DNA of 64,000 bases, from positions 124,001 to 188,000 of the IMG/VR virus record IMGVR_UViG_3300028862_000012. One strand, given 5' to 3'. Under the pieces are notes generated by a model. It made no database searches. It saw only the letters and a list, made by a program, of their open reading frames with translations, and had not been told where the DNA came from. A program made the translations under genes and the position numbers. Of the stretch, positions 21,159 through 62,529 are shown in pieces (position 1 is the stretch's first letter; every line of letters starts with the position of its first letter).

Positions 21159-21169
21159 TAACTATTATA
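21159..21169 (+). promoter_or_regulatory. candidate late-promoter motif TAACTATTATA
   Basis: intergenic, 24 nt before ATG 21193; recurs before other virion/packaging genes. Confidence 0.5.
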
Positions 21170-21192
21170 ATATAACTTTATAAGGAATAATT

Positions 21193-22545
21193 ATGACAAA
21201 AATAGAATCATTCGCTGAATCTTTTCAAGCTGGTTCAGCGCCGAGAATTATAACAAAAATAGAGAGCATACTATCCAGAAGAGTTGGTAATGTAAATATA
21301 ACTAATATACCTATAGAGTATGATAATAAATATGGAAAGTTTCAAGGATTTTATGGGTTAGTTACTGGTTATGCTCAGTTATTTCGCCTTAATTTCTTAT
21401 TAAGTGGTAGTGACTCTATCTATAGTATAGATTTATACAATGGCGTATCTGATAGTCATCCTGCCATTACTGTTGATCTTAATGGTTTTAATATAGTTCA
21501 ATGTTTAGAAGCTATTACAGAAGAGCTTGAAAAAGGGTATGTAGATACAGAGTTAAATGAAGGATACAGATATTCAAATAAAGTAGTTGCACGATTTTTA
21601 GAATATACTTCTGATGATAGAAAAAATATGTTATTTAATACGTGGATAGATCAGGAAAATGATAGTATAGATTTATTACAGAATAAAAGATTAGCTGAAG
21701 TATATACAGTTTTCCTAAAGAAAGACAAAAGATATAATAGTGAAGTAAACTTTGCTAGTTTTCAATCAATGGCTAAAACTTATTTATTTGGAAGAGGGTT
21801 AACTAATCCATCATTTAGAAAGCGCAAGAAAGGTAGTGCAGAACGAGAAGTAGTTGATAAGGCAAAAGAAGATCAGCTTCGAGATATAGTTGATGGAATG
21901 GAAGTAACAAAGAAATTTGATTTTTTAGCTTCTGCGGTTGAAGCAGTTGTGGATAATAGAATACAATCATTACTTTGTTATGGAAGTCCCGGTAGTGGAA
22001 AATCTAAAACAGTAATGGATACCTTAGATAGTTTACATGTAAAACCACAGGTATTTAGTGGTGGTTTTAAAAATACTGATGAATTATTTAAAATTTTAAC
22101 GAAGTATAATGATAATGAAATTCTGTGCTTTGATGACTGCGATTCAGTTTTTAAGTCTATAGATAATAGGAACTTATTAAAATCAATTTTGCAGAATTCT
22201 GAAAAAAGAATAGTAACGTGGCGAGACAAAAAACTTGAGTTTACGAGTGGAGTAATCTTTATTTCTAATTTAGCTAAATTTGACTCGGCTATTGCCAGTC
22301 GATCAATGACTATTGAAATTACATTGACTAATGAACAAATGCTAGATCATATTGAAAATAATTTAAAAGAGTTTATGCCTGAAGTAGATATGAAAACAAA
22401 AAAAATGGCCTTAGATTTTTTAAAGGAAATTTCTTCAGGTGTAAAAACGGTGGATTTTCGAGAGCTTCAGAAGACAATTATATCAATTCAAATTCAGCCT
22501 AAAGGCTGGAAAGATTTTGCATTACTAATGCTTTCATCACAGTAG
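21193..22545 (+). CDS. AAA+ ATPase with unique N-terminal domain
   Basis: LLCYGSPGSGKS Walker A, ILCFDDCD Walker B, GVIFISN sensor, AIASRS arginine finger. Confidence 0.8.
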   Translation: MTKIESFAESFQAGSAPRIITKIESILSRRVGNVNITNIPIEYDNKYGKFQGFYGLVTGYAQLFRLNFLLSGSDSIYSIDLYNGVSDSHPAITVDLNGFNIVQCLEAITEELEKGYVDTELNEGYRYSNKVVARFLEYTSDDRKNMLFNTWIDQENDSIDLLQNKRLAEVYTVFLKKDKRYNSEVNFASFQSMAKTYLFGRGLTNPSFRKRKKGSAEREVVDKAKEDQLRDIVDGMEVTKKFDFLASAVEAVVDNRIQSLLCYGSPGSGKSKTVMDTLDSLHVKPQVFSGGFKNTDELFKILTKYNDNEILCFDDCDSVFKSIDNRNLLKSILQNSEKRIVTWRDKKLEFTSGVIFISNLAKFDSAIASRSMTIEITLTNEQMLDHIENNLKEFMPEVDMKTKKMALDFLKEISSGVKTVDFRELQKTIISIQIQPKGWKDFALLMLSSQ

Positions 22546-22551
22546 AGTGCT

Positions 22552-24783
22552 ATGATAAATTATAATAAATTAATAGACAAAGAAATAAATAAGTTATTAA
22601 ATGAATCAGTAGATTTTGAAAAATATAACAAAATTCTTTTAGAGCATACTTTAGAGTATTTTAAATATACTAAAATAAATAAGTATTCATTAGATGATTA
22701 TTTTAGAGGTGCTAGTGAACCTGATTGGTTTTGGCTATTTTTAAATAATTTACTTAAACGTTATAATGAAGATATCTATACCGAGTATAAAGGTAAAATG
22801 ATAGAAACCTCTGAACTTGTAGGAAACACTTTTACTAAGTATTTAAATAAATTAGCAGGATCACATTTTAGACAAGGACAATGGGATTATGAAAAAATAG
22901 AAGAGTGGTTAAAAGAAAAATTGCAATTAAAAGAATCTATATTAAAAGAACAAATAACAAAAGATTCTATTAAAGAGCTTCAAAAGGAAGCGCAATTATA
23001 TAATAAAGCTATAATGAAAATAGACTCCCCTTATGATTTATATGAAGTAAGTAAGTCTATGCAGGATTATAGTATTAAATTGCATGACTACTTAGAAAAT
23101 ACTTTGAATAGTAGAATTGAAAATACTGGATGGAAGGATGGTCATGGAAATGATTTTAGCTTTTATCCTTTTCAAGAGTTTTATCAGTATTTACGAGAAG
23201 TATTAGATCCCTATAAACTTTCTGGAATTAGAAGAGCATACGATGATTGGAATAAATATGATGAAAATATATGGGTAAATCATTATAGCTCTTTTGAAAA
23301 AAGAAGAAAATCTTTATACACAATGTTTTCTCAAAAGCTAAAAAAAGCATTTGATAACTTGCAAGATTGGCTGGATACCTTTACTAATGGCTATGCACCT
23401 AATCGTTCATCAGAAGAGCTTATAACTTATAATGGTTTTAAAATTAAAGTAACATCTGATGAAGCTCACTCCAATTTCTTAAACTCTAGAGGTAGTAATA
23501 GCTACTCTGTAGAAGATTTCAAAAAAGATTTAGATAACCTAGTACATGACTTAAAGTCAAAATCTATATCACCTGCTTTTTTAAAAAATGCGGTATTTGA
23601 ATTTAATAATACTATTTCTCTGGATATAGGTGGTGATTATCAAGCAACAGGAAATATTATTTCTGTATTACCTGATAAGAAAGAATCTTATACTACTTTA
23701 GTTCATGAAGTGGGTCATTGTTATGAAGTTACTGTTATTTCAAAACAAGCAAGAAGCGCATGGCAAGAGTTTTACAGTGATCCAAAGAATTTTGTATACA
23801 TATCTGATGAGACAAAAAATAATATAAAAAAAGAATTAGAGATAATTTGTAGTAGTAAAGAAATTAAAGATGGCTATGAAGAAAACAAATATAATCATAA
23901 TGGTTTATATAGTATTAAAAATAAGATACGCTTGCAGTTATTAGCTAAGTTTAATAAAAACTCCACTGAATATAAATTATTAACTACATTATTTAATGAT
24001 ATAAAAATAGAGGCAATTGATTATCTTCCTAGCAAGCCAGATGACATTGATTTTTTTATGAGCATATTAAATAACCATGAACTAGGTGGAGTATTATTTC
24101 AAGATCGAATAATACTTAATAATATGTCATTATATAGTGCAAAAAATGAGAAGGAAGCTTTTGCAGAAATGTTTATGTACTATGTTTTAGATTATCATAA
24201 ACAAAAAGATTTCTCTGTTGATTTTATACATTTTTTTAAGTCTATTATTGGCGTATCCTCAACAATTAATGAATCTGTAAATATTACTACTTGGTATCAC
24301 GGATCACCTGATAAAATAACTCATTGGTCTACAGAGTTTATGGGCATAGGTGATGATCAAGAAGGTGCAGGAATTTATTTTACTTCCAATTATGATGACG
24401 CAAGCGGTTATAGTAAAAATAAGGGCTATGTTTATGAAGTTGAATTACATACTACTAAATGGATGAGTACTAAAGCAAAGCCAAAAGTTATTGAGTTAAA
24501 AAAACTTATAGAATTAGCAGATGATTATGAAACCACTTTAGGAAACTGGGGTAATGAAGATCCAGCTAAGGATATGAGAGACTGCTTGAATGACTATCTA
24601 CAATACAATAAAACTATGTTTGAAGCAGTTAAATCAGTATGTAATGATTTTTATCGTTATGATAGTGCAGGTTATTGTAATGCAATAATGTATATTGGAT
24701 ACGGTGGTGTAATAGTTCCAAAAAACTTAGGCGTTTTTCATGCTATAGTTTGGAATCCTAAAATAATTAAAAATATTAGTTGA
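22552..24783 (+). CDS. polyvalent-type protein: zincin metallopeptidase + C-terminal ADP-ribosyltransferase-like domain
   Basis: TTLVHEVGH and YS..NEKEAFAEMF (zincin); WYHGS, GAGIYFTS, ASGY, GYVYEVEL (ART-like). Confidence 0.7.
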   Translation: MINYNKLIDKEINKLLNESVDFEKYNKILLEHTLEYFKYTKINKYSLDDYFRGASEPDWFWLFLNNLLKRYNEDIYTEYKGKMIETSELVGNTFTKYLNKLAGSHFRQGQWDYEKIEEWLKEKLQLKESILKEQITKDSIKELQKEAQLYNKAIMKIDSPYDLYEVSKSMQDYSIKLHDYLENTLNSRIENTGWKDGHGNDFSFYPFQEFYQYLREVLDPYKLSGIRRAYDDWNKYDENIWVNHYSSFEKRRKSLYTMFSQKLKKAFDNLQDWLDTFTNGYAPNRSSEELITYNGFKIKVTSDEAHSNFLNSRGSNSYSVEDFKKDLDNLVHDLKSKSISPAFLKNAVFEFNNTISLDIGGDYQATGNIISVLPDKKESYTTLVHEVGHCYEVTVISKQARSAWQEFYSDPKNFVYISDETKNNIKKELEIICSSKEIKDGYEENKYNHNGLYSIKNKIRLQLLAKFNKNSTEYKLLTTLFNDIKIEAIDYLPSKPDDIDFFMSILNNHELGGVLFQDRIILNNMSLYSAKNEKEAFAEMFMYYVLDYHKQKDFSVDFIHFFKSIIGVSSTINESVNITTWYHGSPDKITHWSTEFMGIGDDQEGAGIYFTSNYDDASGYSKNKGYVYEVELHTTKWMSTKAKPKVIELKKLIELADDYETTLGNWGNEDPAKDMRDCLNDYLQYNKTMFEAVKSVCNDFYRYDSAGYCNAIMYIGYGGVIVPKNLGVFHAIVWNPKIIKNIS

Positions 24784-24937
24784 TTTATAGCAAATAGGGT
24801 GTATACTAATTATATAAAGCAGGAGCAAATATGAAAAAAATTGATTTTCTTGATAGCAAAAACGCCACTACCAGTAGTGTATGATATAAATAGATACCAC
24901 TATCTATAGCGTTTTTTCCATTCATTATAAACCTCTA

Positions 24938-24995
24938 ATAGATTATTAGTAAAATAATTAGTTTTACTATTGATTATTTATTACTAATAATCTAT
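24938..24995. repeat. 15-bp perfect inverted repeat, 28-nt spacer
   Basis: ATAGATTATTAGTAA (24938-24952) / TTACTAATAATCTAT (24981-24995). Confidence 0.8.
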
Positions 24996-25024
24996 ATTTA
25001 TATTACTACCTAGGAGGTTGTAAT

Positions 25025-25312: not shown

Positions 25313-25318
25313 TGTGTA

Positions 25319-25357: not shown

Positions 25358-25358
25358 T

Positions 25359-25421: not shown

Positions 25422-25814
25422 ATGGTTGATAATTCTTTTTTATGTACTGGTTATAGTTTGGGAAAAACAGTTTCAGAGCATAGGAAAGGAAATGAAGAAG
25501 ACAGTATATTAAATCCAAGTATAGATAAGCCTTGGTCAGAAGACGATTTACTATTACATGAGTTTATAGAGTCTAGTGATGGTGTATCTCTAACAGAGAT
25601 AGTCGAATATTTTAATTCAAAAAAGAAAACAAATTGTTCATTACCAAGCATGAATAGTAAATTAATGTCACTTTCAGGAAAGGATTACCGGCTATATCAA
25701 GACACGGTTAAAAGAAAAGAAAGTAAAAGTAAAATAGATGAGAAAACAGGGATTATAACTATTAAATCGATAACAAAGAAAGTTGAACTATATTATATAG
25801 ATGATTATATATAA
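25422..25814 (+). CDS. hypothetical protein, possibly winged-helix
   Basis: 130-aa ORF with RBS; LHEFIESSDGVSLTEIVEYF helix pattern. Confidence 0.5.
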   Translation: MVDNSFLCTGYSLGKTVSEHRKGNEEDSILNPSIDKPWSEDDLLLHEFIESSDGVSLTEIVEYFNSKKKTNCSLPSMNSKLMSLSGKDYRLYQDTVKRKESKSKIDEKTGIITIKSITKKVELYYIDDYI

Positions 25815-27334: not shown

Positions 27335-27344
27335 AGGATGGATT

Positions 27345-28220
27345 ATGATAACAGTAGGTGAGTTCAATACTTTAATAAGTAAAATTAAAAAGTTTGAAAT
27401 GAGTAAGGGTAGAGCAGATGATTGTAAACTTGCAATAATGAACTGTATTAGCTCTGCCTTATTAGGATTAAATGAAAATAATTTAGTAGAAGAGAGCAGA
27501 TCAACTTCTTTGGCTCTGATAAAGCAAACTTCAAAAAACATGATCTTGAATTTAGCTTGTTTGTGTAATTATTTAAATGTGCGAATTAAGTTAGATACAG
27601 GTGTCATGGAGTTAGCATCAGAAGATATTTATACAACTATTTTTAATTTCTATGACGTAGTTCTTAGTATAGATACATCAGATGAACATAAGTTTGAAAA
27701 AGAAAATGCTATCTCTATTTATAATATTTTTATTTGGTTTGTAAAAATATTGGAAGCAAATAATTTAGAAATAACTTTTAATGAAGTTGTAGAAATTTTA
27801 ACTATTATTAGTGAGGAATAACAGATGGAAAAGATGGACAGTGGTTTGTATGTAATTTTTAATAGACTTAATAGGGAACTTAACTTATTTAAAAGCAGAT
27901 TTTTTGCTATGTCTAAAAAAGTAAAAGATGAAGATGCACAGAAAGAGTGGGATAAGCGTAGTGTAGCAGAATTATGGTGTTATTATAATAACTTGCTTTC
28001 AAAGATTAATTTTGAAATCGAAGATCTTGAGACACGTATGCTTACTAATTTTCCTGATGATCTTGAAACTAATTTGCTTATTCAGAAAATTTATATAGCA
28101 AAACTTGAAAAGAAACTTTGTTATTATCCTGAAAATAAAGTATTTATGTTAGAGGACATGACAATTGAAGAAATCAATCAAGAGAATAAAAATCTTGCAG
28201 AACTTGAAGGAATAAAATAA
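27345..28220 (+). other. two hypothetical genes (27345-27821, 27825-28220)
   Basis: ORF track, RBS. Confidence 0.6.
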
Positions 28221-29629: not shown

Positions 29630-31070
29630 TTGTTGCTTTATTTAAAATATGGGTTTATGATACTATATGTTTATTTATAAAGGATTTTTCTATGATAGAT
29701 ACTGATCAATTACTTAATGCTACTTTAGTTTCTGCAATTTTAAGTTTTCCTTTTATTATTTATTTTATTGTAAAGCAAATAAAGCTTAGTAATTATAATA
29801 GGAAATGTAGGCAGGAGCATATAGCAAATATAGTTAATTACTTCTTTGATCTTATTCTTACTAAAGATAAGAAAACAGTGGATGGAAATAATCCGAATAC
29901 TATCAAATTCTTTTGGTGGGATTATAAACAAGCATATCATGATAAAGAAATTTTGAATTATTCCGTTGAAGATTACATAAATATATATCTTAGTCTCTTT
30001 ACGCAAAAAGAACCTATTCATATTTATCGTTCAAAACGAAAAAGAAATAAAATGGCAGAGCGCATGATAGGAAGAGAGATTATCTGGGAAGTTAAAACTG
30101 AAGACCCAGTAGAAGAGGATCTTGTTGTAAACGAAGGAAACTAATATGAATAGAGCTTTAGAAGATCTTGAAAATTGTATTGAAAATAGCAGTGCTTATG
30201 ATGTAGCTGTATTAAAAAATTTAGTTGAAAAAATAAAGAATACTTGCGTTACCGAAATTGATTTAGCTTATGAACTACAATTTGTTAAGGGAATGCCTAA
30301 TGCACATACAGCAGATTTATGTGCAGAGCTTATACTTAGTAAGTTTGAAGGACACATTATAAAAGATAGTGGTATATCAGAATTGTTTAAATAGGAAAGT
30401 ATATGACAAATGATGAAGTTCGAGAACTGTGGAAATATAGCAATTGTGATTATAACACAATGTTCGATAATATAGCTGTATTGCAAAATAATTTAACTAA
30501 AAAATTTGAAGAACATAACAAAATTAATGATCATAAATTATTTTTATCATCAAGATTTAATTATTATTTTACCGATAATACACGTATTATTTCTGATATG
30601 TATTTGTTTGTAAGCGGAACTTATTATATAGATCGTGAGTGCATTAGTTTTAATAAAGATGGTTTTATCGGCTTTGCTGGATGGGCAAGTTCAGAAAATA
30701 CTGCACCAATACTTGAAGCCTTTATAGAAACTTTATCTTTTATTACTAAACAAAGTATTGCAGAGTTACTAAATAGGGAATTAAACTAACATTCTTTAAA
30801 GAAGGTTATATGACAGTTGATAAAATTATTCAACAGGCTTTTAATCAAACAGCCACTAATTCTGATTTTGATGAAATAATGTGGCAACGTACTGCTTATC
30901 CTTTTGATGCTGTGACTGCAAAACAGATATATAAAGTAGCTAGTTCTGTGTATCGTGCAAAAACTAATCATATACCTTTATGTGAATTTTGTGAAAATAA
31001 AGCTACAGAAAATGGCTTGTGTTATATTCACAAAGATATATTTCCACTTAGTAAGTGTATCACTAATTGA
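29620..31070 (+). other. four hypothetical genes
   Basis: 29620-30144 (TM), 30146-30394, 30403-30789, 30810-31070. Confidence 0.55.
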
Positions 31071-31095
31071 CATTAGTAAAAATAAGTTTTATAAA
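31067..31095 (+). promoter_or_regulatory. sigma70-type promoter TTGACA-17-TATAAA
   Basis: sequence match 18 nt before ATG 31113. Confidence 0.7.
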
Positions 31096-31553: not shown

Positions 31554-31865
31554 GGAGCAAAATATGGAAGTAGCATTAATAATTTGCATTATAATAGTAA
31601 GTATGTTTATGCTGTTGTATTTTATTAGACATCTTATAATAGTTAGTACTCCTTATCATGCATATATAAGTTGGAAAGATTTTAAACGGTATCAAACTAA
31701 ATATATGACTTTTTTTGATACTCATATAAATTTTGACTATGATTGGTATTTAGTTTTTCATTTACCTACCTATATTTTATTCTTTTTCTGGTATATTAAT
31801 AAATCTATTAATAATGCAAAAGAAAATATGCATACTCAAATTATTGCTCCGTGGCTGGTAAATAA

Positions 31866-33086
31866 ATGAAACAAATTATAACCAGTTGTTTAGATACTGA
31901 TTTATATAAGTTCTCTCAAGGCCAACTATTTATGCATCAGTTTTCCGATATTGAAACTGAATGGACTTTTAAATGTCGTAGTGATGTATTTTTTACTCCT
32001 GAAATGGTAGAAGAAATTAAATTACAATTAGAAGCATATTGCAATTTGACTTTTACTAAAGATGAACTTAATTATTTATCTTCAACAAAATGGTTATCAA
32101 AAGATTACATAAGCTTCTTATCTGTATGGCATCCATTGTTTGAACATTTTACTATCAATACTAATAATAAATGTGGTTTAAATATTGTAACTCGTGGCCC
32201 TCAGTTTTTAATAAGCTACTATGAAATTCCTGCACTTGCTATTATTAATGAAGTATATTTTTATTATAAGTACAAAGATACTTATAGCAAACTTGAAAGC
32301 TCTTTTAGATATAGGTTATCTGAAAAAATAGATTCATTAGAAGCCAAAGAATTCTGTATAGGAACTTTTTCAGAGTTTGGAACGCGCCGAAGACTGTCTA
32401 AAGATATACAAGAGTATATGCTTATAAAACTTACTGAAAATTTTAATTCTGAATATGAAGATAATAACTTATTTGTGGGTACATCAAATGTATTTTTTGC
32501 TAAACAACTTGGAATAAAAGCAATTGGCACAATGGCTCATGAATCTGTAATGGTAATTGGACAAGGTTATTCAGAGTTTAATCCAGCTTATAGTAATGCT
32601 CGTATGATGGAAGCATGGCATAAAGAGTTTGGAACAGAGCTTGGTATTTATCTAACTGACACTATTACTACAGATTGCTTTTTGAAGGACTTTGATAAAC
32701 TGAATGCAACACTGTTTACAGGAGTGCGTCATGATAGTGGTGATCCCTATAAATGGGGAGAAAAAATAATAAAGCACTATATTGAATTAGATATTGATCC
32801 TCGTACTAAGACACTGCTATTTAGTGATAGTCTAAACTTTGAAAAAGCAGATAAATTATACAATGCTTTTAATAACAGAATACAGGTTGCTTTTGGAATA
32901 GGAACTTATTTATCAAATGATACTTTTGTAGACCCATTAAATATTGTTATGAAGATAACAGAAGCTAACGGAATTCCTGTTTGTAAACTATCTGATGATA
33001 TGGGTAAGTTTATGGGAAAGAGCGAACAGTATCTAAATTATCTACAGCGTTCTATTGATTGGAGAATTAATAATGAAAGTAAATAA
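31866..33086 (+). CDS. pncB: nicotinate phosphoribosyltransferase
   Basis: LDTDLYKF, YEIPALA, SEFGTRRR, GTSNV, GTMAHE, LTDT, GVRHDSGDP, FSDSL, FGIGT, LNIVMK, KLSDD.GK. Confidence 0.93.
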   Translation: MKQIITSCLDTDLYKFSQGQLFMHQFSDIETEWTFKCRSDVFFTPEMVEEIKLQLEAYCNLTFTKDELNYLSSTKWLSKDYISFLSVWHPLFEHFTINTNNKCGLNIVTRGPQFLISYYEIPALAIINEVYFYYKYKDTYSKLESSFRYRLSEKIDSLEAKEFCIGTFSEFGTRRRLSKDIQEYMLIKLTENFNSEYEDNNLFVGTSNVFFAKQLGIKAIGTMAHESVMVIGQGYSEFNPAYSNARMMEAWHKEFGTELGIYLTDTITTDCFLKDFDKLNATLFTGVRHDSGDPYKWGEKIIKHYIELDIDPRTKTLLFSDSLNFEKADKLYNAFNNRIQVAFGIGTYLSNDTFVDPLNIVMKITEANGIPVCKLSDDMGKFMGKSEQYLNYLQRSIDWRINNESK

Positions 33087-34033: not shown

Positions 34034-36904
34034 AATGAAAGAAATCACTTATGAAGAATTTGAAAAACTTATTACTCCTTTGATCGATTATCATAATCAA
34101 ATGGCAGTAGTTGATGATAGCCTGTCTGCTATTTTTCCAGAGTCACGACCTTTTACTGAATTAGGACTAAATGTAGAAAAAGCTTACTTGGAATTAATAA
34201 ATAAGTACTTGGATAATCTCTATTGTGATGAATGGATTAGCTATTTTATCTATGATTGTGCTATGGGTAAAAATCCTATGGAAGTAAGCTATAAAAATAG
34301 TAAAGAAAAGAAAGTAAAATATAGCATGAAAGATATTAAAACGTTGTATAAAGTTATTTATAGTAAGTGAGGTTATATGAAATTATTTGATGTTAAAGTA
34401 GGATCAATGCATTATGGGATAGCTATAGGAATCAGCAAAGAGGCGGTGCAGGATTACTATAATGCTTTGCATACTGTTGATTTTTCTATTGAAGAAATAA
34501 CAGATACAAGTGTACTTCCTAATGTAATGGAAATAAAAATTACTCAAGCTATAAAGGAAAAGTATAAATAAGGAAAGGTTAATATGGCTAAGACAAAAAC
34601 AAAATTAAATCCTGATATTATTTTGCAATGTAGGAAATGCGATCATCTATTGTATATTGATATTAAAAAGTTTATGACACAAAATATAGATAATCTACCT
34701 GATTGCGATGAATGTGGTGAAGAAGGAAATCTTAATTGGATTGTGGTACGTAGTGGAAACTTTACTAAAGACTATGGAATAAAAAATAATGAAGAATAAA
34801 ATTTTAATTATAGGTATAGCAAGTCTATGCCTTTTTTCAGGTTGCAAATATAAAAGTCTATCTGATGTAATTATTCCCTATACTATGTTATATAATGCAC
34901 CAACAGAATTAACTATTAATAATTCAAATTATGGTACTAATTATTCTTATTATTTTATTAAAAGAAATTCTTATTTTATAAGTATCGATGTTCGTAAAAA
35001 CTTATTTGGGTACTATGTATATTCTGAATATATAAAAAAGGATGGTATTATTACTTATGAAAATAAGCACAATATTATTTCTTATAAAAGTATAACTATA
35101 GAAAAGGATTATACTAATGATTGAAAAAATTGATGGTTTTGGTGAAGATATGTTTGAACTAGTTTGTGATGTCTGTGGAGATACAGCAGATATTCCTTTT
35201 GAAAGTTTTTATGATGCAGTAAGTTATAAAAAAGATAAAGATAATGGATGGACAAGCAGGTGTATAGATGATGAATGGGAAGATCGTTGCCCAAGTTGTA
35301 CTTAAAGGATTATATGAGTAGAACAATAGAAGTATCTGATGAACAGTATGAGTTACTTAAAAGTTTTAAGTCAATGCTTGTAGAACAAGACGTAAGATGT
35401 ACCAGCGATCCAGTATATGTCATTGAAGAAAATAAAAGAGTATACGGTGTAGAGGAAAATTATAGTACTGGCTTTGTTTGGTATGTCGATGCTGACGATG
35501 AAATAGAAACAAACTTAGAATTATTTCAAATGGTTTTAGAAAACTGTAAAGATACCTTAGTTAGTCTTTGGAAAGAAAGTAAAGAAACAGAATGTGAACC
35601 AACAGAAGAAGAGCTAAAGCAAAGTTTTTTAGATGATATAGAATATTGGGATGATGGCTTTATTTATGAAAAAGTTCTTGATAATTTAGCAATATCTAGA
35701 GTTTATTATAGAGAAGAGCATAATATTTCATCATCTAGTGCAGTGTTTAGTTTGTTTGAAAAAGATGCCAAAAATTATTGTAATCATGATAGTGCTAACT
35801 GGCATACCTACGCAGTAAGTAGTTATAGATCGAAGCATATGAATGAATTGCGGAAGTTACTAATTGACTTAAAGCTGGAATAAATATATTATGAATAATA
35901 AAAGAATTTCTACTTTTGTAGATAACGAGTGGTATGCTTTTTATAGGGATGTTGATAAAGATTACATTTGTAATCAAAGTATACTTACTATACTAGAACT
36001 ATTTTACAACTACCTAAATGACAAGTCAGAGTATTGTAAAAAGCTCATGGACTACTACAATTTAATTTCAGATAAATATAAAGCTGACTATTGGAAAGAA
36101 AGATACGAAAAGGAAATAAAATGATTTTAAAAGACTATCTAGAAAATACCTATACAATAGGCGAATTAATAATGCTTGATGATTGGTTTAATGGTGATGA
36201 AAATTATTCTACTTGGTGCGAAGTTTGTGTTACTTCCATAATGAAAGGAACAGATTTTGATGATTTAAAAGAAATCTGTGTATGTGTAAAAACATTAATT
36301 ATTAAAAAACTAAAATATGCTTTATCTAGTATTCATGGTAGTGAGATATACTTTAAGGAACAAATATGAGTAAACAAGCTGATTTATTTAATCAGTGGAA
36401 ATTTGAATGTGATAAAATGAAAAACACAATTAATGTTATTCAAAATGACTTTGACAGAATGCTTACAGACGGTAGTTGTACTAAGCAGGATATAGAAAGT
36501 TCCATTAACGATTTTAAGGAAATGTTTAAATATAATATTGCTAATTTTGAAGAACTAGAACAGCATGTTTGTGAGTTGCTATGGGAGAAATCAAGATGAA
36601 TAGTGAACCAGTGGATAACAGTGAAGTAGTACATAGCCTCTTTGGTACTAAAAAAGAAGTAATAAATAATCGTGAAATTTATGGTGTTGATATAGGCGAT
36701 GTATACTATCATTATGAAACTATAGGAAGTGTCTATTGGGGTATGAAGAAGTTCACAATTAAAAAAGTTGGAACAGGTTGTATGTGTTATACTCCTTTTT
36801 ATGTTGAACTTGAATTTACTAATAATGATGGAGAAATAAGTTGTCATCATGTTAGTTCAGAAGAATTAGTTAAAGATTTTTCCGTAACTGAAAAAGAAGC
36901 ATAG
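34026..36904 (+). other. run of small hypothetical genes, several with CxxC Zn-ribbons
   Basis: about nine packed ORFs incl. 34584-34799, 35117-35305 (CDVC..CPSC), 35275-35883. Confidence 0.55.
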
Positions 36905-39836: not shown

Positions 39837-39864
39837 TAAAAAAGTTTATAACTATTAGTTAGTA

Positions 39865-39969
39865 GGGGTATATTTGGTTATCGATTTAGTGGTTGATTGA
39901 AGCGACGAAAGGCCCATATTACGAAAGCTTAGACTGCTAAAGACCGGAGTTCAAATCTCCGATGCTCCA
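39865..39969 (+). ncRNA. mini-tmRNA: tRNA-like domain only, no tag ORF
   Basis: acceptor GGGGTAT/ATGCTCC-A with G3-U70; 13-nt stemless D-loop ATTTGGTTATCGA; helix TTTAGTGGTT/GACTGCTAAA; GAC linker; T arm CGGAG-TTCAAAT-CTCCG; CCA not encoded. Confidence 0.8.
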
Positions 39970-40693: not shown

Positions 40694-40738
40694 ATCCCTT
40701 ATAACTATTATAGTGACACATTATAATTTATAAGGGAT
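40694..40738 (+). promoter_or_regulatory. RBS-occluding hairpin containing TAACTATTATA motif
   Basis: ATCCCTTATA (40694-40703) pairs with TATAAGGGAT (40729-40738, contains AAGGGA); motif at 40702-40712. Confidence 0.6.
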
Positions 40739-40747: not shown

Positions 40748-41494
40748 ATGGACTTAGACTTTTTAAAAACTCCGTGGGGATTTGGTAGTGTAACAGTAGT
40801 AACAGCAGGACTTTGTTTTATTTTATATCGTGTTGGTTATATAGCTTTTGGAAAGTTTCAAGCAGGTAGAAAAGAAAAAGAAAAAGAAATATCTCCTCAT
40901 GCTAGTTGCCCTCATTCAAAGGACATTATGGATATTATACATCGAACGGCAGATCATTATGAAAAAGTCCAGAACTTAAAATCCTCTATAATTAAAGAGC
41001 AAATGAGATACTATGAAGAGATTGAAGAAGAAGTATTAGGACATTTAAAACATATCTTTACAAAATTAATATCAAATAAATTATCTAATAATGAGCAGTT
41101 TATTACTCATTCTGATTATGGCTACTATATGCTTATTTTAAAAGTTATATTTTCTGATTTAAAATCCTATGTTAGAAACTTGTTTTTAGTTAATCATTAT
41201 ATAACCTATTCAATAGAAGATCAGCAAGATTATATTGAAAAGAAAAAAACTATTATAGTACAGAAAATATCAGAATCCATAAATGACTATTGGCGTGGAT
41301 CATTAATAACATGCACTGAAATTTATGAAAAAAATAAAGAACAATTATCTTTTTTTGAAAGTCAAATAAAAGATGTTTTTAATCGAGCATTCTTTACTGC
41401 TCGTGAAGTTAATACTGCAATAATTAAAATGGAAGAAAGTTATCAGAATTATATAGATTCTATAGTTGGAGTTTCTGATGAGAATAAGGAGTAA
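40748..41494 (+). CDS. membrane-anchored protein (holin-like candidate)
   Basis: single N-terminal TM segment then basic patch and helical soluble domain; heads the tail-fibre cluster. Confidence 0.35.
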   Translation: MDLDFLKTPWGFGSVTVVTAGLCFILYRVGYIAFGKFQAGRKEKEKEISPHASCPHSKDIMDIIHRTADHYEKVQNLKSSIIKEQMRYYEEIEEEVLGHLKHIFTKLISNKLSNNEQFITHSDYGYYMLILKVIFSDLKSYVRNLFLVNHYITYSIEDQQDYIEKKKTIIVQKISESINDYWRGSLITCTEIYEKNKEQLSFFESQIKDVFNRAFFTAREVNTAIIKMEESYQNYIDSIVGVSDENKE

Positions 41495-44015: not shown

Positions 44016-44064
44016 ATTATTTTAGTTTTTAACTATTATAGTATAAGTATTTTAAGGAGACCGT

Positions 44065-44298
44065 ATGAAGTTTACAGTAGATAGTGAAGCGAAAAAGGCA
44101 TTACAGGACTTGTGTGATATTGCATTAAAGACAGGCGGAATTCAGAACTTAGTTGCAGTACAAGTTATTTTATCAAATGTTCAGGATATAGAAAAAGTTG
44201 ATAATACTGAAAAAGAAACTGATAAAAATTTAGATAAAAAGAGTTCAAATAAAAAGAGTTCGGATACAAGTTTAGATAAAAAAGAAGTAGCTAAGTAA
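44065..44298 (+). CDS. small hypothetical protein
   Basis: preceded by TAACTATTATA (44030-44040) and RBS AAGGAG. Confidence 0.6.
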   Translation: MKFTVDSEAKKALQDLCDIALKTGGIQNLVAVQVILSNVQDIEKVDNTEKETDKNLDKKSSNKKSSDTSLDKKEVAK

Positions 44299-54927: not shown

Positions 54928-54940
54928 TATTTTTTAGTAA

Positions 54941-54969
54941 TTGACATAAAGTATATAAAAGAATAATAT
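54941..54969 (+). promoter_or_regulatory. sigma70-type promoter TTGACA-17-TAATAT
   Basis: sequence match before ATG 54975. Confidence 0.6.
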
Positions 54970-58570: not shown

Positions 58571-58809
58571 AGGAATAAATATTATGGGTAGAGCTAAATA
58601 TACTTTTGAGTTAGATGAAATACAAGAGAAAGAATTTGATGAGTGGAAAGAAAAGATAAAGGATCTAATGGGAAGTTATGGTGGTTATACCTTTATTTTT
58701 AGACCTAACAGTATTGGATGTGGTGTAACTATTCATAGCGATTTAATTAACAAAGATATAGATGTTTCCCATCAAGAAAATTGGTAGAATAACAGAGTAG
58801 GTTACTTAT

Positions 58810-59514
58810 ATGAAAGTTTTAATTGTAGATGGAAATAATCTTGTATGCGCGGGATATTTTGTAAGTAAAAATTACCCTGAAAAACTTATACCTATGCAAT
58901 GTGCTGATTATTTTAATAATAGAGTAAGTAAGATCGAACAACAATTAGGATGTGATGCAACCTATGTAGCATGGGATGGAATTAATAGTACTGCATGGCG
59001 TAAAACTATATTTCCTGATTACAAGGGAACACGAAAAGAAAAAGAGCCAATGTTGTATGAATGTCTAAATTATGTTCCTGATAATAATATATTTAAAAAT
59101 ATAAAAGTGGAAAATGCTGAAGGAGATGATACTATATATGCACTCTGTCGCTATATGACAGAAACGGGTAACTCAAATTATATATTATCTCATGATAATG
59201 ATATGATTCAAATAGTTCAGGAGAAATTAAGTAAAGGGGTATATACCCATATTAAAAATACTTTTAAATCTATCCCTGATTATGATATAGCTGTTTTTAA
59301 AAGCTTAATGGGAGATACATCAGATAACTTACATGGACTTATGGGGATTGGAGAAAAGAAAGCAATAAAATTAATCGAAAATAATCTAGCAGGATTAACA
59401 GGCGAACAGATACAATTGTTTAGAAAGCATAAACAAGTTATACGATTAGCAAATAATCCTTATAAAGATAATTTTCTTAATACTGTAAAGCAATATATTG
59501 TTAGTAACTCATAA
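58810..59514 (+). CDS. 5'-3' exonuclease (FEN/T4 RNase H-like)
   Basis: LIVDGNN, AWDG, WRK..FPDYKGTR, EGDD, SHDND, LMGDTSDNLHGLMGIGEKKA. Confidence 0.9.
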   Translation: MKVLIVDGNNLVCAGYFVSKNYPEKLIPMQCADYFNNRVSKIEQQLGCDATYVAWDGINSTAWRKTIFPDYKGTRKEKEPMLYECLNYVPDNNIFKNIKVENAEGDDTIYALCRYMTETGNSNYILSHDNDMIQIVQEKLSKGVYTHIKNTFKSIPDYDIAVFKSLMGDTSDNLHGLMGIGEKKAIKLIENNLAGLTGEQIQLFRKHKQVIRLANNPYKDNFLNTVKQYIVSNS

Positions 59515-59703
59515 CTATTATAATATGATAAAAGTATTTTTGAAGTGCATCAATGATGAAGATAGCTTCGAGTATGAAGAATTTTTAGCCGAGTTATCAG
59601 ATCAAAAGTTAAAGAAATATTTAATAATAAATAATTATAGTTATGAAATACTATCTAAAATAGAAACACCTGAATTTACAAAAGTAATAGTAGATAGAGT
59701 ATA

Positions 59704-60346
59704 ATGAGATTACTTGAAACAGATCATTTACTTGAGACAGAACGAGATACTTTTTCAAATAATAATATTAAAAAATATTTATATTTATTGTCGGAAGAAT
59801 TTCCTAATGATATGCCATTAGAATGTAGACAGACTATTTTAAGCTGGAAAGTAGTTTCTAAGTCACCCCTATAGCTATAGTTTTTATGATATAACAGATA
59901 AGTCATGGGACGATACTCATCAAGATTACTTCTATCGTTGTGCAGATCATTGGAATTTTCTATCACAAAGTAAAATTCATTGTCGAACACAAGACAACAA
60001 AGATTATAAGAACTTATACAGTATAGCTGAATACAATCCCGAAACTAATAGATATGTAGTTATGCAAAGTTTTAAGAAAGAAAAGTATGCTGTACCAAGC
60101 ATCATAGATAAACTATCCGGCGAAGAATTAACAGATAGTTTATTAGCATTAATTAATCAAAATGATTTAATAAACAAAAGATTAAAAGATATTATTGTAA
60201 ACTTAGTAGTAACAGAAAATGATAGCATGTTAATAACATCTAAAATTCAAAAAACCATAAATACATTTTATTATTTATTTTCAATAAACCATAGCATGAT
60301 ACAATTAAAAGATAAAGTGTATCATGCTATAAATAAAGACCTATAA
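59704..60346 (+). pseudogene. hypothetical gene split at a C4 run
   Basis: ATG 59704 frame stops at TAG 59874; +1 frame open from 59870 into ORF 60062-60346; removing one C of 59866-59869 gives 213 aa. Confidence 0.55.
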
Positions 60347-60682
60347 CTTACTTTTTAAGCTCATATTTACTTCACTCCGAAGTTGCTTAAATAAAGGACT
60401 ATCACTATAATCTTCATTATCTTCAGCTTGCTTACATTTCAATATATACTGTTCAAATTCTGGGATAGGATAAATACTCATATACACTTTATCTTCTACT
60501 ATCTTTAGTTTAAGCGTTCCAATATCAGGTAATACAATCTCATCATTACCTGCATTACAAATAGCAATATAAGTAATAATACCTTTAAATAACTTATATA
60601 CGTCTTGCTTCTTTTCAATTGAACTAAAGCAACGTATTAACTCTTTAGCCTGTTCGTTTTTATCAATAACTGCATTATTCAT
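60341..60682 (-). CDS. possible HU/IHF-like DNA-binding protein
   Basis: helix-helix then EIVLPDIGTLKL strand motif. Confidence 0.35.
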   Translation of the reverse strand: MNNAVIDKNEQAKELIRCFSSIEKKQDVYKLFKGIITYIAICNAGNDEIVLPDIGTLKLKIVEDKVYMSIYPIPEFEQYILKCKQAEDNEDYSDSPLFKQLRSEVNMSLKSKL

Positions 60683-60691
60683 ACTTCATCC

Positions 60692-61717
60692 TTATAAGTT
60701 TAAATTATATTCTTTTTCTAAGTTTTCTTTTACAATAGTAATTAATTCTCGTATATCACCTTGTGCATGGCTATCACAACGTAAATCAATTACCTTTTTC
60801 CACTGTTCTATATTTGCTGTACTCATAATAGTTGTACTTGTTCCATTTGGCAAAACTTCACGTGCTGTTTCTGGTAAAGTACCTATATCTATTAAGTCAA
60901 AGTATGCTTGTTCCGCTTGAGAATAAGCAGTAAGGTATGGAGCTATTAAAGTAGTACTGGTTAATATATCAGCATTAATCATTGATTGCCTGATTGAGTA
61001 AGGTAGAATAAAATCAATTGAATGATTGAACTTATTTGAACTATAATTACAGTATCTTTGACTGGATTGCGAAACTGAGTTCTTTCTATGGCGAACTAAT
61101 TGATGTGATACTGATCTGCTTGTAGTAAATACAAAAGATTCGTAGCAATGTTTATTAATTTCATAGTTTCTACTATTTTCATTAGGAATAAATTTTAAAA
61201 GATCTTTTATTTCTGATATAGTAAGGATAGGAAAAAGATAATCAACATAGTCATCAATATGTTCTGAAAAAATTATAGGATACAGAATAGTACATGTTTT
61301 ATAAAACTGTATATAAATATTTTGTTCTCCACATTTTAATAAAGAATAATAAGAATTTTTAAAAATATAATTTAGTAATTCATACCAAGCTCTAACATTA
61401 GCACTAATAATACTATAACAATATCCATCTTTCAATATACTACTTATATTAAAAAATCCAGCATAAAAATTACTATCAGGAATAATATTAAAAAGTTTTC
61501 TAGTTATGTCTTCAGCATTATCATACACAAGCATTGAAATACTTTCATGCTCTAATATTGATAAATGACCTTTTTCAATTATTTTTTTAATAAAAGGAAT
61601 ATAACTATCTTCTTTAATATTATTTTCAGAACGATAACATAACCTTCCAGCATATTCCATTTTCTTATATGGAACTGTATTAGGAACATAGGTAACAGAT
61701 GGATCAATAATTTTCAT
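60692..61717 (-). CDS. thyX: FAD-dependent thymidylate synthase
   Basis: AGRLCY, GHLSILEH, RSVSHQLVRHR..SVSQSSQRY, AREVLP, LRCDSHAQGDIR. Confidence 0.93.
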   Translation of the reverse strand: MKIIDPSVTYVPNTVPYKKMEYAGRLCYRSENNIKEDSYIPFIKKIIEKGHLSILEHESISMLVYDNAEDITRKLFNIIPDSNFYAGFFNISSILKDGYCYSIISANVRAWYELLNYIFKNSYYSLLKCGEQNIYIQFYKTCTILYPIIFSEHIDDYVDYLFPILTISEIKDLLKFIPNENSRNYEINKHCYESFVFTTSRSVSHQLVRHRKNSVSQSSQRYCNYSSNKFNHSIDFILPYSIRQSMINADILTSTTLIAPYLTAYSQAEQAYFDLIDIGTLPETAREVLPNGTSTTIMSTANIEQWKKVIDLRCDSHAQGDIRELITIVKENLEKEYNLNL

Positions 61718-61773
61718 ACTAACTCAAATTATTTTATAAATCATTTAACAATTTTTCATATAATTATAAACAG

Positions 61774-61802
61774 AGTATATACAAGTAATTAAATAATGTC
61801 AA
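61774..61802 (-). promoter_or_regulatory. sigma70-type promoter TTGACA-17-TATACT (minus strand)
   Basis: TGTCAA 61797-61802 and AGTATA 61774-61779 on plus strand; drives thyX. Confidence 0.8.
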
Positions 61803-61812
61803 TAAGTAACCT

Positions 61813-62506
61813 CTAAATAGATCTTATAAGATTTTTTAATAATAGATTATACTTGTAAGTAATATTTTTATTCATCCAGTCATATCCTTCTGGATGAATA
61901 TGCTTTAACCAAGTAGGATTACAAAAGTAATAAGAAAAATGTTCTGCAAAGCATTCACCTCCATTTAAAGTTCCATAACTTGAAGGTGATTCTGCCATGT
62001 CATGACAAGGCGTTTTATATTCTTTATTTTCATTATCAAATAAATGACCTATTTCGTGGACTAAAGTAAAAAAAAGAAATATATGATCCTCTTTTAATTT
62101 CAATTTCATCTATAGAAGTACCTACAACTCGGGCTTCCTCTGTACCTGAAAAACTTTTATAAACTATACTTATTCCAAAACTTTCAAGTATTTTTATAAT
62201 AGTATCATCTATTAAAATATTCATAAATAAAGGCTTATCATATTTTTTTATACCATAGGTATGGAACTTCCATTCATATCTTTTTTCACAATAATTGTTA
62301 TATTCTCTAAAGGAAATAAACTCTTTTGAGAAATAATGATTGGATGGATCTTTTTCTGTCATGTCTGTTTCATACTGTACATGAAACTTTTTAAATAACA
62401 GGTCTGTATACTTATCTCTATTTTCTTTATCATTATTTAGTGTAAAATTATCTATAGCATCTTTATAGATTTGAATAACTTCATCATCGTTTTCTTTTAA
62501 ACTCAT
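61813..62506 (-). pseudogene. zincin metallopeptidase gene split at a T8 run
   Basis: T8 to T7 joins ...KRGSYISFF to TLVHEIGH...SYG..ECFAEHF, giving 230 aa. Confidence 0.65.
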
Positions 62507-62510
62507 ATTA

Positions 62511-62529
62511 TAATAGTTAATAACTATTA
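62511..62529. promoter_or_regulatory. back-to-back TAACTATTA motifs (TAATAGTTA-A-TAACTATTA)
   Basis: perfect inverted pair between the divergent peptidase and terminase genes. Confidence 0.6.

What the first reader, a model, noticed from the sequence alone, without database searches (positions are those of the whole stretch)
21159..62529. Candidate phage late-promoter motif TAACTATTA(TA)
TAACTATTATA sits shortly upstream of starts at 21159 (AAA + polyvalent protein), 40702 (membrane/tail cluster), 44030 (tail), 59512 and, on the minus strand, 62509-62519 (peptidase). The core TAACTATTA is at 39849 (7 nt before the mini-tmRNA), 62521 (terminase) and 27799. I saw no TTGACA promoter in these gaps, whereas replication/early genes have canonical sigma70 promoters. 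By analogy to T4 TATAAATA, it may be a -10-only promoter for a phage sigma factor. Caveat: the 9-mer is AT-rich and also occurs mid-gene (34910).
Basis: partly seen in the sequence, partly recalled or inferred. Interest (0 to 1): 0.6.

Follow-up and report, generated by a model that had tools for sequence, protein, structure and literature searches.

The report
Phage-specific promoter box TAACTATTA
The 9-base word TAACTATTA is most likely the middle/late promoter of an uncultivated 224-kb peat phage, a single -10-like box with no -35 partner, and the best candidate for reading it is a newly recognised phage sigma-like protein shared by a large family of giant phages.

Summary
The window has 11 copies of the 9-mer against 3.6 expected. 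The 223,865-bp genome has 55, and 44 of them lie in the 8% of DNA that is non-coding. Forty of those 44 point at a gene start within 150 nt. One-mismatch variants are barely enriched, and there is no conserved -35.

The distance from box to start codon is bimodal: exactly 4 nt with no ribosome-binding site, or 16 nt and more with one. The box also sits 7-8 nt before a tRNA and a tmRNA-like RNA. This places the inferred transcription start about 5 nt downstream of the box.

Four fully fetched relatives each carry their own 'ACTA-box' variant with the same architecture. The box precedes the sheath gene in 5 of 5 genomes and the portal gene in 4 of 5. It precedes no orthologue of UvsX, DnaB or primase.

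A separate sigma70-like class (TTAGTAATTGACA-17-TAnnnT) serves early and replication genes.

No RNA polymerase, gp55 or Pfam-recognisable sigma is encoded. A core 262-aa protein outside the window folds as a zinc ribbon plus a sigma region-2 domain, and it is my candidate reader. No RNA data exist, so timing and start sites remain inferred. I rate it a new variant of the T4-late / phiEco32 kind of promoter.

The parts
21159..21169 (+). Class-B (ACTA-box) promoter, 25 nt before the start codon of the AAA-like ATPase (21193-22545), which is followed by the ART-PolyVal protein (22552-24783)
27799..27807 (+). Class-B box in the last codons of ORF 27345-27821, 17 nt before the start at 27825; probably an operon-internal promoter
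39849..39857 (+). Class-B box 7 nt before the 5' GGGG of a tmRNA-like small RNA
39865..39969 (+). tmRNA-like / tRNA-like RNA (acceptor stem with a G3:U pair, T-arm). It is a non-coding product placed 7 nt after the box, which argues that the box acts in transcription and not in translation
   Evidence: Fold; no Rfam match; not called by ARAGORN
40702..40712 (+). Class-B promoter, 37 nt before the start at 40748 (248 aa, 118 aa and 720 aa, all without family matches)
44030..44040 (+). Class-B promoter, 26 nt before the start at 44065 (77 aa), followed by a 409-aa DUF1565 protein
59512..59522 (+). Class-B box with an ATG exactly 4 nt after the 9-mer (59525) and no ribosome-binding site: predicted leaderless mRNA
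62509..62519 (-). Class-B box on the minus strand with an ATG 4 nt downstream (gene 62036-62506, then a 98-aa gene, then ThyX at 60692-61717). It lies back to back with the next site, separated by 1 bp, forming a perfect palindrome
62521..62529 (+). Class-B box 43 nt before the start of the large terminase gene (62573)
25756..25764 (+). 9-mer copy inside ORF 25422-25814, 124 nt before the DnaB-like helicase; function doubtful
34910..34918 (+). 9-mer copy in mid-gene; probably chance or a weak internal promoter
31635..31645 (-). 11-mer copy antisense inside ORF 31564-31869; chance or an antisense promoter
3070..3099 (+). Contrast class A: TTGACA-18-TATAAT (12 of 12 matches) preceded by TTAGTAA; sigma70-type early promoter ahead of the DnaC-like region. 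Other window copies of the AATTGACA word are at 13352, 31065 and 54939

Best explanation
TAACTATTA is the core of the phage's own promoter class.

Shown:
- It is a sharply defined, strand-specific, single element with no -35.
- It lies in front of about 40 transcription units. These include sheath, tube, portal, major capsid, baseplate-module and terminase genes. They also include some nucleotide-metabolism genes, mobile-element genes, a tRNA and a small RNA.
- Family-specific variants of the same 'ACTA box' occupy the same positions in distant relatives.

Inferred:
- Transcription starts about 5 nt after the 9-mer, which puts the A of ACTA at -11 and the invariant C at -10.
- Genes whose ATG lies 4 nt after the box would then be made as leaderless mRNAs. 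All other genes have leaders of at least 16 nt with an AAGGA-type ribosome-binding site.
- The box is read by host RNA polymerase core carrying a phage sigma-like subunit. My candidate is the 262-aa core protein at genome 53297-54085, outside the window. It has an N-terminal zinc ribbon, a sigma region-2-like domain and a C-terminal helical domain.
- That gene has both a sigma70-type promoter (TTGACA-18-CATAAT) and an ACTA box upstream. This would allow early expression by host RNA polymerase followed by positive feedback.
- The canonical TTGACA class, used by host sigma-A, serves early genes.
For: Statistics and sharpness of the motif.

No upstream conservation.

Bimodal spacing. In this genome 7 exact sites have the ATG at exactly +4, none lies at 5-15 nt, and the rest are at 16 nt or more. 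Two one-mismatch sites also have +4 spacing. The same 3-7 nt cluster followed by a gap appears in all four fetched relatives.

The +4 ATG is a real start. The N-termini of the 189-aa family align at M1 across the five genomes.

The box lies 8 nt before tRNA-Gly and 7 nt before the tmRNA-like RNA.

The back-to-back pair fills the 66-bp divergent gap between the ThyX operon and the terminase gene.

Family-wide variants are the top upstream 8-mer in each genome: AACTAT[TC]T (69 of 76 intergenic), TACTAATA (19 of 24 and 27 of 44) and ACTATATA (21 of 32). More variants appear in 22-kb loci of other relatives.

Orthologue pattern. The box precedes sheath in 5 of 5 genomes and portal in 4 of 5. It precedes the terminase in G000, G001 and G012 of the five genomes and also in locus L012, at leaderless spacing (A of ACTA at -11) in G001, G012 and L012; G012's called start there is GTG, not ATG. 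It precedes no orthologue of UvsX, DnaB or primase.

The sigma candidate. The AlphaFold2 model has pLDDT 93. VIA-align matches to sigma region-2 domains: ShbA Z 9.4 (112 of 113 residues aligned), SigC sigma-2 Z 9.0 at rmsd 2.8 (88 of 88), sigma-E bound to its -10 strand Z 8.0, and T4 gp55 Z 8.0 (116 of 137). Foldseek probability is 0.99-1.0 for sigma-2 domains. The viral structure library returns mostly annotated phage sigma factors. The protein is present in 9 of 9 related records that are at least 90% complete. Its own upstream region was read.

Precedents. T4 late promoters are a -10-like element with no -35 conservation, read by gp55, which has a sigma-R2 homology domain (PMC7892883). phiEco32 has a single 9-bp element tAATGTAtA with starts 6-8 bp downstream, and phage 7-11's sigma uses 'aCTA' as its -10 element (PMC8948821).
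Against: There is no transcript evidence of any kind. The only sequencing runs that hold the phage are peat DNA runs. Start sites and timing are inferred from spacing and gene content.

The link between the sigma-like protein and the box is circumstantial. It rests on both being core to the family and on fold similarity. Z scores of 8-9 lie in the range the tool warns can arise by chance for helical bundles. The protein has no Pfam sigma match, and no sigma was found by sequence search against solved structures.

The box also precedes genes that are usually early or middle (ThyX, NrdG/NrdD), so 'late' is not established.

Eleven of the 55 copies are inside genes.

My terminator-adjacency idea was not significant: 7 of 44 box sites against 12 of 110 control starts.

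Some relatives carry a second, more conventional sigma-like family that this genome and G016 lack. That family could be the real reader in those genomes.
Confidence: 0.7

Rival explanations
1. The box is an unusual promoter read by the host's primary sigma factor alone. The -10 hexamer would be TATTAT (box positions 5-10), and the AAC before it would act as an upstream extension. No phage factor would be needed.
For: TATTAT fits the TAnnnT pattern. In this genome the common extension gives TATAAT at positions 8-13. No Pfam-recognisable sigma is encoded.
Against: With TATTAT as the -10 hexamer, the start would fall after the ATG that lies 4 nt from the box. Yet that ATG is the conserved N-terminus, and the same fixed spacing recurs in five genomes.

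The invariant TAAC occupies the positions where primary sigma factors prefer TGn (established knowledge).

The genome's own sigma70-type promoters look quite different and always have a -35.

Box variants drift between related phages, which fits a co-evolving phage factor better than a conserved host sigma.
Confidence: 0.1
2. The box is the binding site of a phage transcription activator or repressor, for example the conserved 144-aa helix-turn-helix protein next to the sigma-like gene. It would overlap a weak host-type promoter rather than being a sigma-recognised -10 element.
For: The 144-aa protein is adjacent to the sigma-like gene in all five genomes. Its C-terminal half is a helix-turn-helix with weak resemblance to phage Mu C (Z 4.9) and Mor (Z 4.6).
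Against: Mor/C-type and other class I/II activators bind upstream of -35, usually at dyads. This box is asymmetric and strictly oriented, and by the leaderless spacing it sits at -13 to -5. The structural matches of the 144-aa protein are generic helix-turn-helix hits with Z at or below 5.8.
Confidence: 0.07
3. The box is read by a phage-encoded RNA polymerase that the profile searches could not recognise, either single-subunit or a phiKZ/AR9-like split multisubunit enzyme.
For: A strictly conserved short promoter with no -35 is typical of phage polymerases. From memory and not checked here, AR9 late promoters also begin with AAC near -11. Many large proteins of this phage have no family match.
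Against: Six-frame searches found no T7-type polymerase and no beta or beta' double-psi barrel domains. The beta and beta' controls rang in 14 of 14 control genomes. The T7-type control rang nowhere, so that absence is weakly supported. None of the 37 core proteins is an unexplained set of large subunits. The record is only 91% complete.
Confidence: 0.07
4. The box acts in RNA, as a processing site or as a translational enhancer like the T7 gene-10 epsilon sequence, which it resembles from memory.
For: It lies in the sense orientation upstream of start codons, and in nine cases it replaces a ribosome-binding site.
Against: It precedes a tRNA and a non-coding RNA at 7-8 nt. The distance to start codons varies from 16 to more than 50 nt with a separate ribosome-binding site. 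It forms back-to-back divergent pairs where no upstream transcript could supply it. Several copies follow terminator-like hairpins directly.
Confidence: 0.04

Closest known systems
Phage T4 late promoters (TATAAATA) read by gp55, with gp33 and the gp45 sliding clamp
   Same: Both are a single, highly conserved -10-like element with no -35 conservation, placed before virion genes and some homing-endonuclease genes. Both are read by host RNA polymerase carrying a very diverged phage sigma that keeps only a region-2-like core (PMC7892883). The phage here also has gp23-like capsid, T4-like portal, sheath, UvsX, clamp-loader and SbcCD-like genes. The candidate sigma matches gp55 structurally (Z 8.0).
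   Different: The box sequence differs (ACTA core with an invariant C). No gp55 was found by sequence in this genome or in 30 relatives. No gp45-type clamp was found. The candidate sigma is 262 aa, with an N-terminal zinc ribbon and an extra C-terminal helical domain. The DNA polymerase is family A, not B. Many genes are predicted to be leaderless.
phiEco32 gp36-dependent middle/late promoters (tAATGTAtA) and phage 7-11 gp47 promoters (GTAAtg-16-aCTA)
   Same: phiEco32 has a single 9-bp consensus element with no -35, starts 6-8 bp downstream, and serves both middle and late genes. Phage 7-11 uses 'aCTA' as the -10 element of an ECF-like phage sigma (PMC8948821). Both phages use sigma70-type promoters for early genes.
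   Different: Those are small podoviruses of enterobacteria whose sigma factors can be recognised by sequence. Here the sigma candidate is recognisable only by predicted fold. The element sits closer to the inferred start (5 nt). It is spread over about 40 sites in a 224-kb genome.
ECF (group 4) sigma factors and their -10 elements
   Same: The best structural matches of the candidate are ECF sigma-2 domains: SigC, sigma-E, ShbA and SigW. From memory of the sigma-E / -10 complex work, ECF sigma-2 reads a short -10 element in which one base, a C at -10, is flipped out. The inferred geometry here also puts the invariant C at -10.
   Different: ECF promoters have a strong -35 (AAC-type) read by region 4, and none is present here. 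There is no Pfam Sigma70_r2 or Sigma70_r4 match. The zinc ribbon is not an ECF feature.
Group 2 jumbo phages of Iyer et al. 2021 (gp23-type capsid, no RNA polymerase, phage sigma factors plus gp33)
   Same: This phage shares the overall strategy described for that group: no phage RNA polymerase, phage-encoded sigma factors that redirect host RNA polymerase, and a gp23-type capsid (PMC7824862).
   Different: That group is defined with a family B polymerase and recognisable sigma and gp33 proteins. This phage has a family A polymerase, and no gp55-type late sigma and no Pfam-recognisable sigma were found in it by sequence. I did not search for gp33 separately.

Membership tests
T4-type late promoter system (gp55/gp33/gp45) | Conserved 8-9 bp -10-like element with no conserved -35 | tested here: met
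   The exact 9-mer is 80% intergenic. Information content is at most 0.2 bit from -42 to -4.
T4-type late promoter system (gp55/gp33/gp45) | Located before virion/morphogenesis genes and not before replication genes | tested here: met
   Sheath 5 of 5, portal 4 of 5 and terminase 3 of the 5 genomes plus locus L012 carry the box. UvsX, DnaB and primase orthologues do not. The box also precedes ThyX and NrdG/NrdD.
T4-type late promoter system (gp55/gp33/gp45) | gp55 homologue encoded | tested here: inconclusive
   phrog_234 and phrog_12791 found nothing in this genome, and phrog_234 found nothing in 30 relatives. A core protein does have a gp55/sigma-2-like predicted fold (Z 8.0 to 7d7c_F).
T4-type late promoter system (gp55/gp33/gp45) | gp45 sliding clamp as activator | tested here: not met
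   phrog_223 has no match at E <= 10. A clamp loader is present, so a clamp of another type may exist.
T4-type late promoter system (gp55/gp33/gp45) | Transcripts start a few nt downstream of the element, late in infection | not testable with these tools
   No RNA run holds the phage. The start is inferred at +5 from the leaderless spacing.
Sigma70-family protein (for the 262-aa candidate) | Region-2 (sigma-2) fold | tested here: met
   The model has pLDDT 93. It matches SigC sigma-2 over 88 of 88 residues at rmsd 2.8 (Z 9.0) and ShbA over 112 of 113 (Z 9.4). Foldseek probability is about 1.0. This rests on a predicted structure only.
Sigma70-family protein (for the 262-aa candidate) | Sequence-profile match to Sigma70_r2 / Sigma70_r4 | tested here: not met
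   None of 116 family members hits a sigma Pfam family. Six-frame searches were negative.
Sigma70-family protein (for the 262-aa candidate) | Binds RNA polymerase core and directs initiation at the box | not testable with these tools
   This needs biochemistry.
Host sigma70/sigma-A promoter | -35 TTGACA about 17 bp upstream of a TAnnnT hexamer | tested here: not met
   The box has no -35. The genome's separate class A does fit this pattern.
Single-subunit (T7-like) or multisubunit (phiKZ/AR9-like) phage RNA polymerase promoters | The phage encodes the polymerase | tested here: not met
   PF00940, PF00562 and PF00623 gave no six-frame match. The PF00940 control rang nowhere, so that absence is weakly supported.

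The most novel reading that the evidence does not exclude
A very large, uncultivated family of T4-like giant phages has more than 200 terminase relatives on contigs up to 385 kb. It may run its middle/late programme through a previously unrecognised sigma family, a zinc ribbon fused to a sigma-2-like domain, represented by 592 clusters at 50% identity with no Pfam sigma match and no sigma match in solved structures. This factor would read a drifting single-element 'ACTA box' whose invariant C sits at -10. It would launch a sizeable share of late mRNAs, including terminase and tail-tube mRNAs, as leaderless transcripts. Box and factor would co-evolve from clade to clade.
Probability: 0.45. Interest if true: 0.65.

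Novelty: new variant of a known kind. Interest (0 to 1): 0.5.

Why it matters
The box gives a ready, testable transcription map of about 40 promoters and two promoter classes for a phage lineage known only from metagenomes.

It links that map to a concrete candidate factor that sequence annotation misses.

It suggests that leaderless late mRNAs are a conserved feature of the lineage.

The clade-specific box variants could serve as a marker for sorting these contigs. They would also allow a study of co-evolution between a sigma factor and its promoter.

The mechanism is not new. It extends the T4 gp55 and phiEco32 gp36 paradigm to a new protein family and a new box.

Tried and rejected
Literature search for the 9-mer returned only primers and unrelated hits.

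Rfam found nothing in the window or around the small RNA.

The phage nucleotide collection had no near match. A single-protein search of viral contigs found nothing. An alignment-based search succeeded.

The search for sequencing runs returned only two peat DNA runs and no RNA, so I did not use read laying.

Sigma and polymerase searches in this genome were all negative: Sigma70_r2, r4 and r4_2, two gp55 PHROG families, the gp45 clamp, T7 RNA polymerase, and the beta and beta' domains. The single r4_2 hit lies in a homing-endonuclease-like protein.

A conventional sigma-like family found in relatives has no counterpart here by hmmsearch or hhalign. Synteny downstream of the DNA polymerase led to a 188-aa protein that does not look like a sigma.

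hhalign of core families against T4 gp55 gave nothing.

I tested whether boxes preferentially follow terminators. They do not, significantly: 7 of 44 against 12 of 110.

The generic sigma70 scan is at chance level in this AT-rich DNA (157 found against 147 expected). Only the extended TTAGTAATTGACA word defines class A.

Complex prediction for the sigma-like protein with its 144-aa neighbour returned no verdict (score 0.00). This is evidence neither for nor against binding.

The 144-aa neighbour shows only a generic helix-turn-helix resemblance.

Full report
WHAT THE WINDOW IS

The window is bases 124001-188000 of a single 223,865-bp IMG/VR virus record. It has 29% G+C. CheckV rates it 91% complete, and no terminal repeats were found. 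The only public runs that hold it are peat metagenome DNA runs, and none is RNA. My own simple gene caller gives about 380 genes covering 92% of the sequence.

The phage is very divergent, and most proteins have no PHROG or Pfam match. Recognisable genes include:
- tail sheath, two tail tubes and baseplate J;
- a gp23-like capsid and a T4-like portal, identified through relatives;
- large terminase;
- UvsX, a clamp loader, primase, DnaB, a DnaC-like protein and SbcCD-like proteins;
- a family A DNA polymerase, NAD-dependent ligase, anaerobic ribonucleotide reductase and ThyX;
- an ART-PolyVal polyvalent protein;
- inteins and several homing endonucleases.

THE OBSERVATION

Two copies were missed, at 25756 (+) and 31635-31645 (-).

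- In the window the 9-mer occurs 11 times against 3.6 expected, and the 11-mer 6 times against 0.41.
- Genome-wide there are 55 copies of the 9-mer.
- Forty-four of them lie essentially outside genes, although only 8% of the DNA is non-coding (P about 2e-38).
- Thirty-seven are fully intergenic, against 1.95 +/- 1.3 expected from a Markov model of the intergenic DNA itself. AT-richness is therefore not the explanation.
- Forty of the 44 point towards a gene start within 150 nt.
- The word is unusually sharp. Exact copies are 80% intergenic, and one-mismatch copies only 13%.
- An unbiased count of 8-mers in upstream regions puts TAACTATT and AACTATTA at the top.

ANATOMY

Aligning the sites shows no information upstream of the box, with at most 0.2 bit from -42 to -4. 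There is a preference for W W (not T) just before it and for T/g A a/t T after it.

The distance from the end of the 9-mer to the start codon is bimodal. It is exactly 4 nt in seven exact sites, and also in two one-mismatch sites. No site lies at 5-15 nt. From 16 nt upward the leaders carry an AAGGA-type ribosome-binding site.

The +4 ATG is a true start. For the 189-aa family the N-termini of all five orthologues align at residue 1.

The box also lies 8 nt before the mature 5' end of tRNA-Gly. It lies 7 nt before a tmRNA-like RNA at window 39865-39969.

At 62509-62529 two boxes sit back to back, 1 bp apart, as a perfect palindrome. They fill a 66-bp divergent gap between the ThyX operon and the terminase gene, where no other conserved element exists.

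Together these facts place a transcription start about 5 nt after the box. They make an RNA-level role or a translational role unlikely.

A SECOND, CONTRASTING CLASS

The word (T)TTAGTAATTGACA is the next most enriched in upstream regions. In nearly every intergenic copy it is followed 16-18 bp later (17 bp in most) by a TAnnnT hexamer.

It precedes the UvrD helicase, the DnaC-like region, the PNKP-ligase / methyltransferase (RNA-repair-like) region, a SAM-lyase-like gene, a tRNA and many small unknown genes. This is what a host sigma-A early class should look like.

It also argues that the host uses a canonical sigma70-type polymerase.

RELATIVES

The terminase has more than 200 metagenomic homologues at about 40% identity, on contigs up to 255 kb. 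An alignment-based scan fetched 74 IMG/VR loci from records up to 385 kb.

The exact 9-mer is not conserved across them. De novo counting shows that most loci have their own enriched upstream word, all on one theme: ACTAATT(A), TACTAATA, TAACTAT(T), ACTATTA, CCTATTT(A), CTTATTA.

I fetched four relatives whole. In each, the top upstream 8-mer is an ACTA-box variant:
- AACTAT[TC]T, 69 of 76 copies intergenic;
- TACTAATA, 19 of 24 and 27 of 44;
- ACTATATA, 21 of 32.

In each genome there is again no -35, and the same bimodal spacing appears, with a 3-7 nt cluster and then 14 nt or more. In four of the five genomes the first A of ACTA lies 11 nt before the A of the ATG.

Orthologue by orthologue, the box precedes sheath in 5 of 5 genomes and portal in 4 of 5. 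It precedes the terminase in G000, G001 and G012 of the five genomes and also in locus L012, at leaderless spacing (A of ACTA at -11) in G001, G012 and L012; G012's called start there is GTG, not ATG. It precedes no orthologue of UvsX, DnaB or primase.

This supports a middle/late, virion-gene-centred class. In this genome, however, the box also precedes ThyX, NrdG/NrdD, GIY-YIG and HNH homing endonucleases and a TnpB-like transposase gene.

WHO READS IT

Six-frame profile searches found no T7-type polymerase, no beta or beta' domains, no Sigma70 region 2 or 4, no gp55 and no gp45. gp55 was also absent from 30 relatives.

Some relatives have a divergent but conventional sigma-like family. This genome and G016 lack it.

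Among the 37 proteins shared by all five genomes, one caught my eye. It is a 262-aa protein at genome 53297-54085, outside the window, with an invariant CxxC...CPxC motif. This is followed by a segment whose conserved pattern (K-P-D-F-x-I-x-x-S-F-x-G-Y...L-Y-N-K) reads like sigma region 2.1-2.3.

- It has no Pfam family. Among 116 members only zinc-ribbon models hit.
- It has no sequence match to solved structures beyond the zinc ribbon.
- The exhaustive profile search found 592 representative clusters.
- With a 116-row alignment, AlphaFold2 gave a model with pLDDT 93.
- Foldseek's list is dominated by sigma factors, with probability 0.99-1.0 for isolated sigma-2 domains.
- VIA-align gives ShbA Z 9.4 (112 of 113 aligned), SigC sigma-2 Z 9.0 (88 of 88, rmsd 2.8), sigma-E bound to its -10 strand Z 8.0, and T4 gp55 in the late open complex Z 8.0 (116 of 137).
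- The viral structure library returns mostly annotated phage sigma factors.
- The protein is found in 23 of 31 related records, and in 9 of 9 that are at least 90% complete.

The tool warns that Z below about 13 can be chance for helical proteins. The weight therefore rests on four things: full-domain coverage, the consistency of the hit lists, the sequence pattern, and the protein's core status.

In this genome the gene is preceded by TTGACA-18-CATAAT and then by the box 19 nt before its ATG. This suggests early synthesis followed by self-reinforcement.

The 144-aa neighbour is adjacent in all five genomes. It has a C-terminal helix-turn-helix with only generic matches, all at Z 5.8 or below, including sigma region 4, Mu C and Mor. 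A complex prediction of the two proteins gave no verdict.

COMPARISON WITH KNOWN SYSTEMS

The architecture works like two known systems. T4 late promoters are a -10-like element with no -35, read by gp55 with its sigma-R2 core (PMC7892883). phiEco32 gp36 promoters are a single 9-bp element with starts 6-8 bp downstream, serving middle and late genes (PMC8948821).

Phage 7-11's ECF-like sigma even uses 'aCTA' as its -10 element (PMC8948821). The overall strategy matches the 'group 2' jumbo phages of Iyer et al. (PMC7824862).

It is not a member of the T4 late system in the strict sense. gp55 and gp45 are not detectable by sequence, the box differs, and the candidate sigma has extra domains.

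From my own memory of the sigma-E / -10 structures, ECF sigma-2 flips out a C at -10. The inferred geometry here also puts the invariant C at -10. I did not test this.

VERDICT

The motif is real. It is almost certainly a promoter element (about 0.8) of a phage-specific, mainly virion-gene class.

That host RNA polymerase reads it through the zinc-ribbon sigma-like protein is my best inference (about 0.5).

Nothing measures transcription, so timing and start sites remain to be shown.

Noticed in passing
window 39865-39969 (+): A tmRNA-like or tRNA-like small RNA. Its 5' end (GGGGUAUAUUUGGUUAUCGA) resembles tmRNA 5' ends. The acceptor stem has a G3:U pair and there is a T-arm (GGAGUUCAAAUCUCC). 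Neither ARAGORN nor Rfam calls it. I did not establish whether it carries a tag reading frame.
   Followed up: partly
window 3068-3099, 13352-13382, 31065-31095, 54939-54969; about 17 intergenic copies genome-wide: A second promoter class: a conserved TTAGTAA directly upstream of TTGACA, then about 17 bp, then TAnnnT. The extra upstream word is more conserved than an UP element would need to be. It might be a regulator site used for early shut-off.
   Followed up: partly
genome 53297-54516 (L003:15297-16513), outside the window: A conserved gene pair: a zinc-ribbon sigma-like protein (262 aa) and a helix-turn-helix protein (144 aa). They are adjacent in all five genomes compared, and neither has a Pfam family.
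   Followed up: yes
genome 89965(-)/90013(+) and 116432(-)/116464(+); window 31635-31645(-): Box copies that point antisense into the 3' end or interior of genes. Two of them are mirror images of a sense box across a terminator-like hairpin. They may be antisense promoters or by-products of palindromic spacers.
   Followed up: no
genome 16066-17241(-), 45125-46729(-), 51908-53179(-), 219045-220487(-): Mobile-element genes each sit directly behind an ACTA box: GIY-YIG and HNH homing endonucleases and a TnpB-like transposase gene. This resembles homing endonuclease genes behind T4 late or middle promoters.
   Followed up: partly
genome 24860-27247(-) and 109898-112126(+): Inteins in adenylosuccinate synthetase (with a LAGLIDADG domain) and probably in the anaerobic ribonucleotide reductase NrdD.
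   Followed up: no
genome 33931-34001(-), in the tRNA cluster at 28.6-34.3 kb: ARAGORN reports ten tRNAs. One is of undetermined identity, with a four-base anticodon loop call (aatt).
   Followed up: no
window 14122-16623 (+): An 833-aa protein with a PNKP-ligase domain plus a methyltransferase domain, which looks like an RNA-repair enzyme.
   Followed up: no
relatives G001 110146-110808, G003 70486-71055, G012 103710-104486 and about 12 loci: A second, more conventional sigma-like family with regions 2 and 4 is present in many relatives. It is absent from this genome and from G016, the two genomes whose box is of the TAACTAT type.
   Followed up: partly
terminase homologues: Some homologous terminases are filed in public bins labelled Patescibacteria or Pacearchaeota. 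The terminase carries the Pfam MJ0330_N domain. The host of this phage family is unknown, and the bin labels may reflect mis-binning.
   Followed up: no
genome 121432-122908 (L007:7432-8905): Two adjacent DNA methyltransferases, one N6/N4 type and one Dam-like D12 class. They are shared mainly with G016.
   Followed up: no
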